Positions 43,353 through 64,000 of a DNA stretch of 64,000 nucleotides are shown here, one piece after another. The DNA lies in assembly GCA_964036045.1 (NCBI GenBank), contig OZ038379.1, positions 8,866,001-8,930,000 on the forward strand, read 5' to 3'. A program made the translations under genes and the position numbers. The notes under the pieces were generated by a model that ran no database searches, was not told the origin of the DNA, and saw only the letters and a program-made list of their open reading frames with translations. The stretch comes from Eutreptiella sp. 'Long Island Sound 2002'. Lineage: Eukaryota > Protista > Euglenida. Positions within the stretch are counted from its first letter, which is position 1. Every line of letters starts with the position of its first letter.

Positions 43353-43590
43353 GTGTGTTGTGTGTGTGTGTGTGTGTGTGTGAGTGTGTGTGTGTGTGTG
43401 TGTGTGTGTGTGTGTGTGTGTGTGTGTGTGTGTGTGTGTGTGTGTGTGTGTGTGTGTAGCGTGTGTGTGTGTATGTGTGTGTGTAGCGTGTGTGTGTGTG
43501 TGTGTGTGTGTGTGTGTGTGTGTGTGTGTGTCTGTGTGTGTGTTTGTGTGTGTGGGTGTGTGTGTGTGTGTGTGTGTGTGTGTGTGTGTG
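43353..43590. repeat. (GT)n microsatellite
   Basis: Read directly. Confidence 1.
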
Positions 43591-43721
43591 ATCTGTACTT
43601 TTAGAGGTGGATCCTTGTGCAGCGTTGGGCTGGACGCCTCATTTGGCTCAGGTCTGCTGAGGCCTCTTTGTGACGTTGTTTCCCTCCCTTCTGCGGAATC
43701 AGAACCTCTGTATTTTGCTGG

Positions 43722-46700
43722 CTAGGTATCCAGAGTGTTTGCTCTCCCGTGCCTCGTCACGAAAAGCGGGCGGGCGACATCCTCGGCCATGGTCTCCTCT
43801 AGCCCCCGTGGAACTGGGGCTGGTGGGGACGGAGGGGGGGGTGTTTTCGGCCTCCTGCGTTTGGGGGCTGGAGGGGTGGGGGGTTGGTGTGGGGACCTCA
43901 GCAGACCCGTAGAGATACGTGCAGGCCCTTGCAGGCGTGGTCGTTTGTGGGGCAGTTGTGCATGTGCAGCAAGTGGGCGCTTCCGGCGCGCAGGCACTGG
44001 GGTGCACACTTTATGGTGTCCCCGCTGACAGCAGTGGCGCACTCCCCTTTGCTTGAGTGTGCACCTCGGGCACGGTGGCAGGCCATGCAGTGGGCACAGT
44101 TGCAGTTGCGGTCTGCGTGCTATGTGGTCATCAGCGTGATGTCCCAGCGCACAGCATGCTTCAGCTGTGCGCCGAAGTCTCTTGCAGGTCGTGCATGCGT
44201 CAGCAGAGTGCTGGGCACACTTTGACGGATCAGCCGGCGGCGCCGGTGGTGGCGCCCTGTGTGTGTTTGCGCGCCTGCGTGTCCCGGTGTAGGGGCGCTG
44301 TGGGAGCTTCCCATCCCCTATCACAGGGAAGAAATCAGCTGCAAAGGAGGAGCAGCCCCCCCCCCCCCCCTTTGGCAAAAAGGGTCTGCTCCGAGGACGG
44401 AGCCAGCCCCAACTGCAGATTCCCCTGGAGTGCACGTTGTAGTCGATGCTCCTCCACTTCCTGCGCTGTTCTGCGTGGCCTATGTGTGTACGGGCGCAGT
44501 TTGTGTATTCTGTTGAGACCAACCTTGGTGGCCCACGTGCGCTCACAGTATGCCGCTAACTGCTGAACGTGCATGTTCATGGCACTGCGGCAGGTGAAAT
44601 AGGGGCGGCAGTTCAGGCCGCAGAGTGCCGGCCCCCCCAAAGGAACTAAAGAGCTGCAGCGTGTGACCACACGCGCTGGATGCAAATGGCCTTTGGTGAC
44701 CAGACGCTGCGCATTTGCCATTGCCAGTCGTAAGACCCGGCCTCTCTCTTGCAGTGAAAGGGTGGTGCCCTTAAATTTTGCCTGTGGAGCGTGTGGGAGG
44801 GTGCGTTGCGCAAATTCCTCAAAGTCCAGTGCGAGTTCCAAGAACGTCACTGTGCCTGGTTTAGGGGCCCAGTGCACTTCCCTCAGCCAGCATAGCAGGT
44901 CCGCCAAAAAGGGCATTTCCCACTGCCATTCCACCTTCTTAGGGGTACGCAAAAGAAGTAACCCTTTGTCTTCCGGTCTGGGGAGGGGTCCCACCAGTTG
45001 GTGGTACGGGTATTGCCGAAGCTGCTGTGAGAGGCTCGACCCCATGAAAAGCATGGGGGATTGTGTGTCTCGTAACTTGCGGGCCTGCAAAACGGCTACT
45101 AACATATTGTGCAGAGCTGTCATGAATGCGAGCGCTGTCCCTGACTTGACGCTGTCTGTGTCTAACTCTGGGGCTAATCCACAAAGTCGTAAACATGGGG
45201 GCCACTGGTCCATGAGGGGAAGGCCTGTGATCTGTGCTGCCGCCGTGCTGATGCCCGGCAGGTGGGTGTCCCGCACCGTACTCCAGGCTGAGCACTGCCA
45301 AAAAATGTGCTCCTCGTTTTCCGGAGCATTGCCACAGTACGGGCACGTGGACGTGGCTCTCATGCCACGTTGATAGGCCCGGAGGGCTGTCCAGGTTGCT
45401 CCTGATAGGATGCCCCGCAGGATAGAGCGCTGTAACTCTGTGGCAAATGACGCTATGCTGGGCTGGACCAGGCGCCGGCATGTGGTGTAATGAGCCCCCG
45501 CGAAAAGGCGGGGACGCCTCTAAACTAGGCTGTCCAGCATTTGCGAGCGCAGCTGTTCACGCACCTCGTGCTTGACAGTGTTTTTATCCCCGTATAGGAG
45601 GAGGGGTTCCTGGCGCCCAGGCACTTTCCATCCCCACCATCCCTGCGTAGCGACCCAGCCACACTCCTGTGCTGTGGACATGGCTTGGCCGTATGGGCCG
45701 GAGCCTTTGTGAAATGTTGTCATCTCCCAAATGGCTTGGGCTGTGATCTGTCCAGCACCCCTGGTGCGACACAGCTGGGATAACCACAGGATGCGATGAT
45801 ACTTAAGTACCAAGGTAGGTGCAATCCGGTGTCCTTTGCACAGCAAGGTGAAAAAGATTTCTTTGGCCCTTCCGGGCCGTGACCGTCCCCAAATGGTCTG
45901 CATGACCTTAGTCTCGAAGGGCAGAAGGTCTTTGGGCTGAAGTGGCACTATTTCTGCTGCGTGCAGGCCAGTGGCCGTGATCATTGTGGAGATGATGTCG
46001 CATCTCCTTTCAAAATTGCCCTGAGCACCATGCACCCTATCCAGGAGGCTGCAGGCTCTGGAAATCCTTTTCTTGATGAGCGGTCCCGAACAAGTCGCGT
46101 CCGTGGTGCGGACCCCCGCGCCCAGGGACTTAAACTCAGAAGAGATAGGGAAGGGCACCCCCTGTAGTGCTGCCTTCACTGGGTGACGGGCGTCAGACGA
46201 AAAGCCGACAGATTTCTTCGCGTTCACCCCTTGACCCGTGTCCTCAAGCCAGTCAGTGGTGCAGTCTAGCAGGGGGGTGAGGGTATTGCTTCCGGCTGCA
46301 AACCCATAAGTATCATCCGCATACCCAAGGGCAGTTAGGATGAATTGCAGGGCCTGCGCGCGGGCATATCTCTTCCCTAGTGCGCATAGGCTGTCATACA
46401 GCGACATACAGTCTACCAGCGTTGGCAGGGGGCGTATGAGTGGGAGGGAGGGGTCAAGGGCACTGGCCACAAATTCATGAAGCAGCAGGTCCTCACAAAA
46501 GGCCAGCGCCGTTTTGCGCATGCGGCGGCACGCGGCCTGCCACGATAGTTCCACCTGTCTGGGCACCACCCCTGGCCGGAAAACCTGGCTGGCTTTGCGT
46601 TTGGCGGATGCCGGGACTCGTTTGCCCCTGATGCCCAGCTGGGCACGTTGCCACTGGATGACCGAGCGAAGGGCTCCCAGGGTCCCTGTGATTTTGGAAA

Positions 46701-62119: not shown

Positions 62120-62769
62120 ATCTGTACTTTTAGAGGTGGATCCTTGTGCAGCGTTGGGCTGGACGCCTCATTTGGCTCAGGTCTGCTGAGGCCTCTTTGT
62201 GACGTTGTTTCCCTCCCTTCTGCGGAATCAGAACCTCTGTATTTTGCTGGCTAGGTATCCAGAGTGTTTGCTCTCCCGTGCCTCGTCACGAAAAGCGGGC
62301 GGGCGACATCCTCGGCCATGGTCTCCTCCAGCCCCCGTGGAACTGGGGCTGGTGGGGACGGAGGGGGGGGTGTTTTCGGCCTCCTGCATTTGGGGGCTGG
62401 AGGGGTGGGGGATTGGTGTGGGGACCTCAGCAGACCCGTAGAGATACGTGCAGGCCCTTGCAGGCGTGGTCGTTTGTTAGGCAGTTGTGCATGTGCAGCA
62501 AGTGGGCGCTTCCGGCGCGCAGGCACTGGGGTGCACACTTTATGGTGTCCCCGCTGACAGCAGTGGCGCACTCCCCTTTGCTTGAGTGTGCACCTCGGGC
62601 ACGGTGGCAGGCCATGCAGTGGGCACAGTTGCAGTTGCGGTCTGCGTGCTATGTGGTCATCAGCGTGATGTCCCAGCGCACAGCATGCTTCAGCTGTGCG
62701 CCGAAGTCTCTTGCGGGTCGTGCATGCGTCAGCAGAGTGCTAGGCACACTTTGACGGATCAGCCGGCGG
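62120..62769 (-). mobile_element. 5'-truncated LINE fragment (about 650 bp), nearly identical to the 3' end of copy 2
   Basis: Matches about 43591-44240 and is flanked by (GT)n on both sides. Confidence 0.95.
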
Positions 62770-63288
62770 TGTGTGTGTGTGTGTGTGTGTGTGTGTGTTT
62801 GTGTATAGCGTGTGTGTGTGTGTGTGTGTGTGTGTAGCGTGTGTGGGTGTGTGGGTGTGTGGGTGTGTGGGTGTGTGTGTGTGTGGGTGTGTGGGTGTGT
62901 GTATAGCGTGTGTGGGTGTGTGGCCGTGTGGGTGTGTGGGTGTGCGTGTGTGTGTGTGTGTGTGTGTGGGTGTATAGTGTGTGTGGGTGTGTGGGTGTGT
63001 GGGTGTGTGGGTGTGTGGGTGTGTGGGTGTGTGTATAGCGTGTGTGGGTGTGTGTGTGTGTGGGTGTGTGGGTGTGCGGGTGTGTGTGTGTGTGTGTGTG
63101 TGTGTGTGTGTGTGTGTGTGTGTGTGTGTGTGTGTGTAGTGTGTGTGGGTGTGTGGGTGTGTGGGTGTGTGGGTGTGTGGGTGTGTGGGTGTGTGGGTGT
63201 GTGGGTGTGTGTATAGCGTGTGTGGGTGTGTGGGTGTGTGGGTGTGTGGGTGTGTGGGTGTGTGTGTGTGCCTGTGTGTGTGTGTGTG
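62770..63288. repeat. Compound (GT)n / (GTGTGGGT)n microsatellite
   Basis: Read directly. Confidence 1.
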
Positions 63289-64000
63289 ATCTGTACTATT
63301 TACGAGGTTGATGGCTTTTAATGTCCTGGCCGCTCTTGCGACGGGAGGGTTAGGGGTTAGCGGGTTAGAGCCTGCCTGAAGCCTGCCCTATCCCACCCCC
63401 GGCCCCCCGGTATGTCGCGGCGCGGCGGAAGGACGCCTTCCTGAGGCTATGTGCCCTCCTCGGAGGCCCTCCCGTGGCCCTTATCTGGGCCCCGAGTGCC
63501 GCCGCGGGGCGACGCCGCCGTCCCCTGCCCTGCTGGGCCTCCCCCCTCCCCCCCGGTCACGGGGGCTGGCATAATCGCCGACCCTCCTGAGGGCAACACG
63601 CCTGCTCGCTGCTGTAGCCCCCCCCCCTGCACCGGCAGGCACCGTTGTCCTCCCCCCAACACCCTGGGATGCCCCTCGTGATGGCGGCTGCAGCAATGCC
63701 GCACCCCCCTGTGCCCCTTGCATGACTTGCATGCCGGGGCCCTGTGCTCATCGCACAGGGTCTGCATGGGGCGCCGCGGCTGCCCCACCCGTTTTCCCCC
63801 TGCCCGCTGCGCCCTCTTCTGTGGGGGGGAGGGGGGCAGGGTCTCTCCCTGATGCCCTGTGACTGCCCCTGGAGAGGGGTCTTGCCCCGCCCGCGCGGCG
63901 GACGTCGCCGCCACGGCCCCCCTGGAGCCGTCCCCTGTGGGGTGGGGGTCTGTCGACATCTCCTGTCCCCCCCCTGAGGGGTCCCCCACCGCCGCCTCCG
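63289..64000 (-). mobile_element. 3' end of a more distant LINE family, running off the window
   Basis: Same terminal GTACAGAT(CA)n as copies 2 and 3; ORF contains CDEHRAPACKSCKGHRGVRHCCSRHH, homologous to the ORF2 C-terminal module. Confidence 0.8.

What the first reader, a model, noticed from the sequence alone, without database searches (positions are those of the whole stretch)
43353..64000. A (GT)n/(CA)n landing pad shared by two unrelated retroelement classes in opposite polarity
Seen: five elements in a row, with every boundary in (GT)n. All four APE-LINEs end in (CA)n on their sense strand, while the GIY-YIG PLE ends in (GT)n on its sense strand, so they sit head-to-head at 49.8 kb and tail-to-tail at 54.6 kb. 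Known: some LINEs are microsatellite-specific. Inference: two different nucleases (APE and GIY-YIG) cut opposite strands of the same repeat, and each insertion adds new repeat, giving a self-growing retroelement stack, or one class uses the other's nicks.
Basis: partly seen in the sequence, partly recalled or inferred. Interest (0 to 1): 0.8.

Follow-up and report, generated by a model that had tools for sequence, protein, structure and literature searches.

The report
Two retroelement classes sharing one microsatellite
In this Euglena-like genome, a group of LINE families and a Penelope-like element both insert specifically into GT/CA microsatellites but always in opposite orientations, so they pile up in mixed stacks. 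Each habit is already known; the strict antiparallel sharing by two classes is the new detail.

Summary
From 43.35 kb to the window end, five retroelement copies are separated only by (GT)n on the + strand: an RT-deleted LINE, a 5'-truncated Penelope-like element (PLE), an intact LINE, a 650-bp LINE 3' fragment, and a LINE-like 3' end cut by the window.

The orientation rule holds genome-wide (2.28 Gb).
- LINE 3' ends are followed by (CA)n on their sense strand in 199 of 200 listed copies.
- Full-length LINE 5' ends are preceded by (CA)n in about 94 of 100.
- PLE 3' ends are followed by GT-rich repeat in 96 of 100 and never by (CA)n.
- 5'-truncated copies of both classes have the same repeat on both sides, so the repeat is a target, not only a tail.

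A repeat variant found only at this locus marks four of the five arrays, so the stack is one ancestral array invaded repeatedly.

That the two nucleases nick opposite strands is inferred from the retrotransposition mechanism, not shown. Pairing of each element's RNA 3' end with the primer strand could equally set orientation. Growth of the arrays by insertion has only suggestive support. Dependence of one class on the other is not supported.

Precedents exist: silkworm TRAS/SART, MinoAg1 and Chlamys PLEs. This scan had already noted CA-targeting LINE stacks and (TG)n-inserting PLEs elsewhere in this genome.

The parts
43353..43590 (+). (GT)n array, 238 bp, on the tail side of LINE A. Carries two copies of the locus-specific GTGTAGCGTG variant.
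43591..49788 (-). LINE A, 6.2 kb. Has the full-length 5' end GGTGTTTTGTTTGGTGC. ORF1 and the APE part are present, ORF2 residues about 482-822 (RT core) are deleted, and the frames are broken. Ends ...AAAAGTACAGAT then (CA)n.
   Evidence: the family's 3' 16-mer has 721 genomic hits, 100 of 100 listed followed by (CA)n
49789..49826 (+). Short (TG)n, 38 bp, with the TAGCG variant. Head-to-head junction between the LINE A 5' end and the truncated PLE 5' end.
49827..54501 (+). Penelope-like element, truncated by about 548 nt at its 5' end. ORF 49819-53082 (GIY-YIG second half, CxC, RT with FKDN). 3' UTR ends ...TTTGTAAACACTCAA then (GT)n.
54502..54721 (+). Nearly pure (GT)n, 220 bp, 98% perfect, between the two 3' ends (tail-to-tail). 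The only array of the stack without the locus-specific variant, so a candidate for newly made tail repeat.
54722..61961 (-). LINE B, 7.2 kb, apparently intact. ORF1 60205-61617 (470 aa); ORF2 55328-59956 (1542 aa: APE-like N-terminus, L1-like RT, zf-RVT). Ends ...AAAGAACAGAG then (CA)n. Its 5' end is identical to that of LINE A.
61962..62119 (+). (TG)n array, 158 bp, with TATAG(C)G variants, between the LINE B 5' end and the 3' end of the LINE A-family fragment.
62120..62768 (-). 5'-truncated 649-bp 3' fragment of the LINE A family (97% identical to LINE A), with (CA)n on both sides of its sense strand.
62769..63288 (+). Compound array, 520 bp: repeating units of GTGTATAGCG, (TGTGTGGG)n and (TG)n. 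The same variant recurs in array context 5.2-5.4 kb past the window end and nowhere else in the genome.
63289..64000 (-). 3' end of a further LINE-like element, cut by the window end. Ends ...AATAGTACAGAT then (CA)n. No protein match inside the window.
   Evidence: one search places the next variant-bearing array about 6 kb further on

Best explanation

The LINE families have an APE-type nuclease and an L1-like RT. Their RNA ends in (CA)n, so their cDNA must be primed by a 3'-OH on the GT strand. The Penelope-like elements have an N-terminal GIY-YIG nuclease and are of the Naiad/Chlamys type. Their sense strand always runs into (GT)n, so their cDNA must be primed from the CA strand.

Which factor fixes the strand is not resolved: strand-specific nicking, pairing of the RNA's 3' repeat with the primer strand, or both. 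Long arrays are large targets, and each insertion leaves repeat on both of its sides and probably adds some at its 3' end. Elements therefore accumulate in the same arrays as mixed stacks.

Shown here: target specificity, orientation, independence of the two classes, and a single ancestral array at this locus. Inferred: which strand is nicked first, and that insertion adds repeat.
For: LINE specificity and orientation:
- LINE B 3' 15-mer: 164 hits, 99 of 100 listed followed by (CA)n.
- LINE A 3' 16-mer: 721 hits, 100 of 100.
- Shared full-length 5' 17-mer: 132 hits, about 94 of 100 preceded by (CA)n.
- All 7 LINE pieces with both ends in the held DNA (6 independent) have (CA)n on both sides.

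PLE specificity and orientation:
- 3' 14-mer: 147 hits. 96 of 100 listed are followed by GT-rich repeat and none by (CA)n; the 4 others are at the chance level shown by the control.
- About 13 of 23 junctions, most of the 5'-truncated copies, are also preceded by (GT)n.
- A second PLE family at 23% identity (L013) and a ~6-kb family with terminal direct repeats are also GT-sense.
- All repeat arrays within each 10-kb locus share one strand.

Single ancestral array: the GTGTATAGCGTGTG variant occurs in array context only at this locus, in four of its five arrays, and again 5.2-5.4 kb past the window end.

Added repeat: the tail-to-tail array is pure and lacks the variant; PLE 3' arrays are longer than 5' arrays (median 260 vs 140 bp, p = 0.024); PLE tags of 18-71 nt lie inside arrays.

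Element identity.

Precedents.
Against: - No biochemical or RNA-end data, so the nicked strand and the RNA 3' ends are inferred.
- A target-site duplication cannot be read inside a microsatellite.
- The array-length comparison is crude and some copies are not independent (segmental duplicates on C7 and C17).
- The tail-to-tail array in L009 shares interruptions with its neighbouring arrays, so 'new tail' is not general.
- Part of the array growth could come from unequal exchange. The 62.8-63.3 kb array has a higher-order periodicity, and PLE-tag clusters show repeated spacings.
- The PLE's RT is not recognised by Pfam or by PDB profile searches. Its motif C reads FKDN.
- No reads were available to check the assembly.
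Confidence: 0.8

Rival explanations
1. Orientation is set by the nucleases alone. The APE nuclease nicks only the GT strand and the GIY-YIG nuclease only the CA strand. RNA-primer pairing plays no part.
For: In silkworm TRAS1/SART1, which enter (TTAGG)n in opposite orientations, the nuclease domain is the main determinant, and swapping it transfers specificity (PMC7265360). Junction phase is nearly constant here...CAGAG then CACA for the LINE...CTCAA then GTGT for the PLE.
Against: A constant junction phase is equally expected if the first repeat units are copied from the RNA. The 168-bp units capped by the spliced leader, and the PLE tags of 18-71 nt, all end directly in (GT)n, which fits priming by pairing with (GU)n. 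Nothing here measures cleavage.
Confidence: 0.3
2. One class depends on the other: PLEs use nicks or tails made by LINEs, or the reverse. Mixed stacks would then reflect mechanistic coupling.
For: PLE loci are enriched for LINE A/B ends: 2 of 14 independent loci have an exact LINE B 3' end within 10 kb, against about 0.06 expected from genome-wide density (Poisson p about 0.002). A LINE's (CA)n tail is a ready-made PLE target.
Against: 12 of 14 independent PLE loci have no LINE A/B end nearby, and many PLE copies sit alone in plain arrays. LINE ends (at least 885 exact) far outnumber PLE ends (147). Each class encodes its own nuclease. A shared preference for long arrays explains the enrichment.
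Confidence: 0.04
3. The stack is not a series of insertions into one array. It is either an assembly misjoin across microsatellites or the product of recombination between separate element-plus-array units.
For: Microsatellite junctions are classic misassembly sites. The LINE A fragment with its array resembles LINE A with its array (97% over 812 bp including repeat). Higher-order periodicity in the 62.8-63.3 kb array points to some unequal exchange.
Against: The arrays are 38-520 bp, within reach of long reads. The same locus-specific variant marks arrays across the stack and one beyond the window, which a chimeric join of unrelated loci would not give. The same junction types recur at independent loci L003 and L009.
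Confidence: 0.06
4. The (CA)n and (GT)n are only the elements' own 3' tails, and insertion sites are random. The 'landing pad' would then be an illusion created by tails.
For: Many LINEs carry simple-repeat tails, and the 3' repeat starts in a fixed phase.
Against: The 5' flanks are the same repeat: about 94 of 100 full-length LINE 5' ends, every 5'-truncated LINE piece and most 5'-truncated PLE copies. Arrays within a locus all share one strand.
Confidence: 0.02

Closest known systems
TRAS1 and SART1 of Bombyx mori, telomere-repeat-specific APE LINEs (PMC7265360)
   Same: Two element families insert into the same tandem repeat in fixed, opposite orientations. Each starts TPRT on a different strand, and they form arrays within the repeat.
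   Different: Both are APE LINEs of one clade. The target is the 5-bp telomeric repeat at chromosome ends, and their tails are poly(A). Here the two partners belong to different classes (APE LINE versus GIY-YIG PLE), the target is a dinucleotide repeat dispersed over the genome, and the elements' 3' ends run into the target repeat itself.
MinoAg1 and other microsatellite-specific APE LINEs: Waldo, Kibi, Koshi, Dong (PMC3812793)
   Same: APE-type LINEs specific for a simple repeat; MinoAg1 targets (AC)n.
   Different: Those are insect and fish elements. From memory, they belong to the R1 clade. The RT here matches L1 ORF2p best among solved structures, and the host is a euglenid. Clade membership was not tested by phylogeny.
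Chlamys/Naiad Penelope-like elements with N-terminal GIY-YIG (Craig et al. 2021, PMC8557442; PMC9977147)
   Same: Domain order GIY-YIG, then CxC, then RT. Frequent extreme 5' truncation. Strong insertion bias for microsatellites, with (CA)n and (C)n named for Chlamys.
   Different: That paper lists green algae, spike mosses, slime moulds and animals, and does not mention euglenids. In the passages I read it states no strand orientation and no co-occupation with LINEs. This family's RT escapes Pfam and has DN in place of DD at motif C.

Membership tests
APE-type non-LTR retrotransposon (LINE), L1-like | LINE-type reverse transcriptase domain | tested here: met
   LINE B ORF2: Pfam RVT_1 at 1.2e-15 (58 bits, cut-off 29.6) and zf-RVT at 1.6e-4. 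Best solved relatives are human L1 ORF2p at 8e-11.
APE-type non-LTR retrotransposon (LINE), L1-like | N-terminal apurinic/apyrimidinic-type endonuclease | tested here: met
   Pfam Exo_endo_phos reaches only E = 0.09, below its cut-off, and the PDB match to ExoIII is E = 0.9. However, 29 of the 30 nearest named Atlas clusters for residues 1-260 carry Exo_endo_phos or Exo_endo_phos_2, with a best score of 0.95. Support is moderate, not from a curated threshold.
APE-type non-LTR retrotransposon (LINE), L1-like | No LTRs, fixed 3' end, variable 5' truncation | tested here: met
   Copies share 3' ends and differ at their 5' ends. There are 132 full-length 5' ends against at least 885 3' ends.
APE-type non-LTR retrotransposon (LINE), L1-like | Placement in the L1 clade by RT phylogeny | not tested
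   Only best-hit evidence is available.
Microsatellite-specific LINEs (MinoAg1 type) | Most copies have the same simple repeat on both sides, in one orientation | tested here: met
   94-100% of listed junctions, all CA-sense.
Microsatellite-specific LINEs (MinoAg1 type) | Sequence-specific cleavage of the repeat by the element's nuclease | not testable with these tools
   Needs a nicking assay.
Penelope-like elements, Naiad/Chlamys clade | N-terminal GIY-YIG nuclease with catalytic R, H, E and N | tested here: met
   The alignment of 13 relatives keeps IY...YVGQ...R..EH...E...APTxN. The AlphaFold model (pLDDT 72) matches the I-TevI catalytic domain best of 48,161 chains (Z 7.2, rmsd 2.8 Å, 83 of 92 residues), with T4 EndoII third at Z 6.5. 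Z is middling. Foldseek alone was not significant, and Pfam and PDB sequence searches were blank.
Penelope-like elements, Naiad/Chlamys clade | CxC motif between nuclease and RT, and a DKG/DKA-type motif | tested here: met
   The alignment of 9 relatives has PCxC...PxLxNxTGH (one Cys and the Asn invariant) and WDK. The feature is as defined in PMC8557442.
Penelope-like elements, Naiad/Chlamys clade | PLE/TERT-type RT, with an insertion in the fingers domain (IFD) | tested here: inconclusive
   Pfam, PDB phmmer and a PDB profile search were all blank. Motifs read by eye are DMxD, QxxGVxIGGFLS and RxxDN. The nearest Atlas clusters carry GIY-YIG, RVT_1, HTH_animal and DUF8422 at scores of 0.92-0.96. 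No phylogeny and no RT fold were obtained.
Penelope-like elements, Naiad/Chlamys clade | Pseudo-LTRs or partial tandem copies | tested here: inconclusive
   Partial copies lie in tandem but are separated by (GT)n (L008, the C17 cluster). This family shows no classic pseudo-LTR. A separate ~6-kb GT-sense family does have terminal direct repeats.
Penelope-like elements, Naiad/Chlamys clade | Frequent 5' truncation and microsatellite insertion bias | tested here: met

The most novel reading that the evidence does not exclude
The telomerase-related PLE reverse transcriptase may not only land in (GT)n but also build it. Repeated, mostly abortive priming events, leaving tags of 18-71 nt, would each copy the (GU)n end of the RNA and lengthen the array. 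LINE tails would add the complementary repeat. The two classes would then jointly create and enlarge their own kilobase-scale niche, and could mobilise other RNAs that end in GU repeats, such as the 168-bp units capped by the spliced leader.
Probability: 0.2. Interest if true: 0.7.

Novelty: new variant of a known kind. Interest (0 to 1): 0.45.

Why it matters
The locus is a natural side-by-side comparison of the two main TPRT machineries, APE LINE and GIY-YIG PLE, acting on one simple target with opposite orientation. It makes testable whether the nuclease or RNA-primer pairing chooses the strand. The PLE retrotransposition mechanism is still uncharacterised in vitro, as PMC8557442 states. 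The finding also adds euglenids to the hosts of N-terminal-nuclease PLEs. It suggests that part of this genome's long GT arrays is shaped by retroelements. For annotators, repeat orientation predicts element class and strand in this genome.

Tried and rejected
Searches that returned nothing useful:
- Pfam on the PLE ORF, on the full-length ORF and on ten homologues.
- PDB sequence and profile searches for the PLE.
- The word-indexed protein search.
- Single-sequence AlphaFold, pLDDT 40, unusable.
- Foldseek against the PDB: not significant, though GIY-YIG entries appeared among the weak rows.
- Rfam on the whole window, and at a permissive threshold on the LINE 5' end.

Technical limits:
- The window copy's own LINE B 3' 18-mer is unique because of one substitution. 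I had to use the family version taken from other copies.
LINE flanks were therefore read from pattern matches rather than from fetched loci, and no formal test of mixed-stack frequency per array was possible.

Readings rejected:
- 'Tails only, no targeting', because of the 5' flank counts.
- 'One class uses the other's nicks', because most copies are solitary.

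
Full report
**What is in the window.** The window is GC-rich, about 0.55-0.65. From 43,353 to the window end there are five GT-type arrays, all with GT on the + strand: 43353-43590, 49789-49826, 54502-54721, 61962-62119 and 62769-63288. Between them lie five retroelement copies.

- LINE A and LINE B. A self-comparison shows two long minus-strand elements that are 73% identical to each other, at 43591-49788 and 54722-61961.
- LINE A-family fragment. A 650-bp piece at 62120-62768 is 97% identical to the 3' end of LINE A.
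- LINE B detail. It has a 470-aa ORF1 and a 1542-aa ORF2. ORF2 matches Pfam RVT_1 at 1.2e-15 and has a weak zf-RVT match. Its best solved relatives are human L1 ORF2p, at 8e-11. The N-terminal 260 residues read like an APE nuclease. Pfam reaches only E = 0.09 there, but 29 of the 30 nearest named Atlas clusters carry Exo_endo_phos families.
- LINE A detail. It keeps ORF1 and the nuclease part but lacks ORF2 residues about 482-822, the RT core.
- The fifth piece, 63289-64000. It gives no protein match. It ends in the same terminal motif as the LINEs, AGTACAGAT followed by (CA)n.

**The plus-strand element is a Penelope-like element (PLE).** It lies at 49827-54501, and its ORF (49819-53082) is blank in Pfam and against the PDB.

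Other genomic copies show that the window copy has lost about 548 nt from its 5' end. The full-length element is 5.2 kb, and an intact copy (L007) encodes 1130 aa.

The word-indexed protein search found nothing. Full HMMER found 518 relatives, mostly fragments that Pfam does not recognise. Three lines of evidence identify the protein.

- Alignments. The relatives keep IY...YVGQ...R..EH...E...APTxN at the N-terminus. Downstream they keep PCxC...PxLxNxTGH and WDK. These correspond to the GIY-YIG, CxC and DK motifs that define Naiad/Chlamys PLEs (PMC8557442).
- Structure. An AlphaFold model built with that alignment has pLDDT 72. Its best match among 48,161 chains is the I-TevI catalytic domain: Z 7.2, rmsd 2.8 Å, 83 of 92 residues. 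T4 EndoII is third at Z 6.5. Z is middling and Foldseek alone was not significant, so I weigh this together with the motifs.
- Atlas features. The nearest clusters combine GIY-YIG with RVT_1 and animal PLE-type families, at scores of 0.92-0.96.

The RT itself I could not confirm by any profile method. Its motif C reads FKDN, and relatives share RxxDN.

**Genome-wide test.** The window is C2:8,866,001-8,930,000 of a 2.28-Gb assembly. I fetched 20 loci of 10 kb around PLE 3' ends.

| Probe | Genomic hits | Flank among the 100 listed |
|---|---|---|
| PLE 3' 14-mer | 147 | 96 followed by (GT)n or (GTGC)n, 0 by (CA)n, 4 non-repeat (control finds 4) |
| LINE B 3' 15-mer | 164 | 99 followed by (CA)n |
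| LINE A 3' 16-mer | 721 | 100 followed by (CA)n |
| Shared LINE 5' 17-mer | 132 | about 94 preceded by (CA)n |

- The PLE hits listed fall in about 40 independent loci.
- In the fetched loci, about 13 of the 23 PLE junctions, most of the 5'-truncated copies, are also preceded by (GT)n on the sense strand.
- All 7 LINE pieces with both ends in the held DNA (6 independent) have (CA)n on both sides.
- Every 10-kb locus has all its arrays on one strand. Every LINE and PLE end in the 264 kb I hold obeys the rule: LINE is CA-sense and PLE is GT-sense.

The repeat is therefore a target and not only a tail. Each class has one orientation, opposite to the other.

GT-sense appears to be a PLE trait more broadly. 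A second PLE family at 23% identity (L013) follows it, and so does a ~6-kb family with terminal direct repeats.

**The stack derives from one array.** A rare interruption, GTGT(A)TAGCGTGTG, occurs 11 times in the window arrays at 43.4, 49.8, 62.0 and 62.8-63.2 kb. It is absent from the 54.5-kb array and from 24 kb of arrays at the 20 other loci.

Genome-wide, the 14-mer occurs in array context only here and at C2:8,935,247-8,935,419, which is 5.2-5.4 kb past the window end. The arrays are therefore pieces of one ancestral compound microsatellite. The stack continues beyond the window, which fits a fourth element about 6 kb long.

**Does insertion add repeat?** The evidence is suggestive only.

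- For: the tail-to-tail array (54502-54721) is 98% pure and is the only one without the local variant.
- For: across 17 PLE copies the 3' array is longer than the 5' array, median 260 against 140 bp, Wilcoxon p = 0.024. The measure is crude and some copies are not independent.
- For: arrays outside the stack in this window are 20-46 bp, against 38-520 bp inside it and up to about 1.7 kb at other loci.
- For: arrays contain PLE tags as short as 18-71 nt, and there are clusters such as 25 PLE ends within 13 kb on C2.
- Against: the tail-to-tail array in L009 shares interruptions with its neighbours.
- Against: the higher-order periodicity at 62.8-63.3 kb points to unequal exchange as well.

**Mechanism.** In TPRT the nicked DNA strand primes cDNA synthesis on the RNA's 3' end. 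An element whose sense strand runs into (CA)n must be primed by the GT strand, and one that runs into (GT)n must be primed by the CA strand. The first nicks of the two classes therefore fall on opposite strands. This is logic, not measurement.

What selects the strand is open. In silkworm TRAS/SART the nuclease decides (PMC7265360). Here the constant junction phase, and the fact that short foreign-looking RNAs also end directly in (GT)n, fit pairing of a (GU)n RNA end with the (AC)n primer at least as well.

Dependence of one class on the other is unlikely. 12 of 14 independent PLE loci have no exact LINE A/B 3' end within 10 kb. Co-occurrence is still enriched: 2 loci against about 0.06 expected from genome-wide density, p about 0.002. 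Two elements that share a target and favour long arrays would give exactly this.

**Host.** It occurs 5,458 times with at most one mismatch, against 0 for the reversed control. The assembly size is close to the published 2.37 Gb (PMC11252322). Earlier notes of this scan also call the genome euglenid. I did not determine the species.

**Comparison with what is known.**
- Microsatellite-specific APE LINEs are known, including MinoAg1 for (AC)n (PMC3812793).
- N-terminal-nuclease PLEs with a strong bias for (CA)n and (C)n are known from Chlamydomonas, with very short truncated insertions (PMC8557442 and PMC9977147).
- Two families using one repeat in opposite orientations is known from TRAS/SART.
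- I found no paper that links PLEs with Euglena. I found none describing an APE LINE and a GIY-YIG PLE sharing one microsatellite antiparallel. The library is incomplete, so this is absence from what I could search.
- This scan had already noted CA-targeting LINE stacks and (TG)n-inserting PLEs elsewhere in this genome. Those notes are leads that I tested on my own families, not independent support.

**Verdict.** This is a new variant of a known kind and of moderate interest.

Noticed in passing
genome-wide (G000); A 24-nt Euglena-type spliced-leader sequence occurs 5,458 times (at most 1 mismatch; reversed control 0), dispersed over all chromosomes. That is far more than expected for SL-RNA genes alone, which suggests many retrocopies of trans-spliced RNAs.
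   Followed up: partly
L020:6287-6454 and L020:7413-7580 (C4, about 23.188 Mb); Two identical 168-bp units lie inside a (GT)n array, GT-sense. Each begins exactly with the spliced leader and ends ...GGTTTTCCCGCACGAA then (GT)n. That 3' 16-mer has 415 genomic hits, about 85 of 100 listed followed by (GT)n. About 13 of 100 are internal copies paired about 6.0 kb upstream of a terminal one, which indicates a ~6-kb element with terminal direct repeats. The short units look like trans-spliced sub-RNAs of that element that were retroposed. The leader is directly preceded by (GT)n at about 34 sites and by (CA)n at 6.
   Followed up: partly
window 52.7-52.8 kb (PLE ORF) and L007:543-3935; The PLE's presumed RT motif C reads FKDN rather than xxDD, in the window copy and in L007. 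Relatives at about 33% identity keep RxxDN. The family is nevertheless young and multi-copy. Pfam and PDB profile searches do not recognise the RT.
   Followed up: partly
window 49760-49788 and 61933-61961 (minus strand); LINE A and LINE B are only 73% identical overall but share an identical 29-nt 5' end (GGTGTTTTGTTTGGTGCC...). An earlier scan note proposes an HDV-like ribozyme there. Rfam found none at a permissive threshold.
   Followed up: partly
C2:112,632,945-112,645,936; C8:14,238,806-14,240,663; C14:26,666,679-26,669,339; Dense clusters of very short PLE 3' ends (for example 25 within 13 kb), each followed by (GT)n or (GTGC)n, some with repeated spacing. They could be serial abortive insertions or tandem amplification of tag-plus-repeat units.
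   Followed up: no
L009:5323-7016, L012:6413-7622, L019:7187-8679, L013:5065-5796 and L013:2438-3004, L010:6801-9527 (locus coordinates converted from the GT-oriented segment names): Other unclassified segments lie between (GT)n arrays and end, in GT orientation, in their own short repeats: (GCATGAA)n, (CATGA)n or (CCTGA)n. Their strand and class are not determined. One group begins GACTGGTACCA..., which read on the CA strand resembles a LINE 3' end.
   Followed up: no
genome-wide; Listed LINE A/B copies on the large chromosomes cluster toward both chromosome ends. On C1, for example, they fall at 0.8-26 Mb and 129-199 Mb, with few between.
   Followed up: no
window 18.9-19.3, 25.6-25.9, 30.3-30.7, 33.4-33.9, 36.5-36.8 and 41.9-42.4 kb, and L005:5820-6261; A dispersed repeat of about 250-500 bp, 86-96% identical between copies, occurs at least seven times left of the stack. 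No LINE or PLE protein match lies in 1-43 kb.
   Followed up: no
C7, 11.85-19.46 Mb (L014-L018); The same 5'-truncated PLE copy with identical flanks recurs at least 10 times over 8 Mb. It is part of a large segmental or satellite-like duplication, not independent insertions.
   Followed up: no
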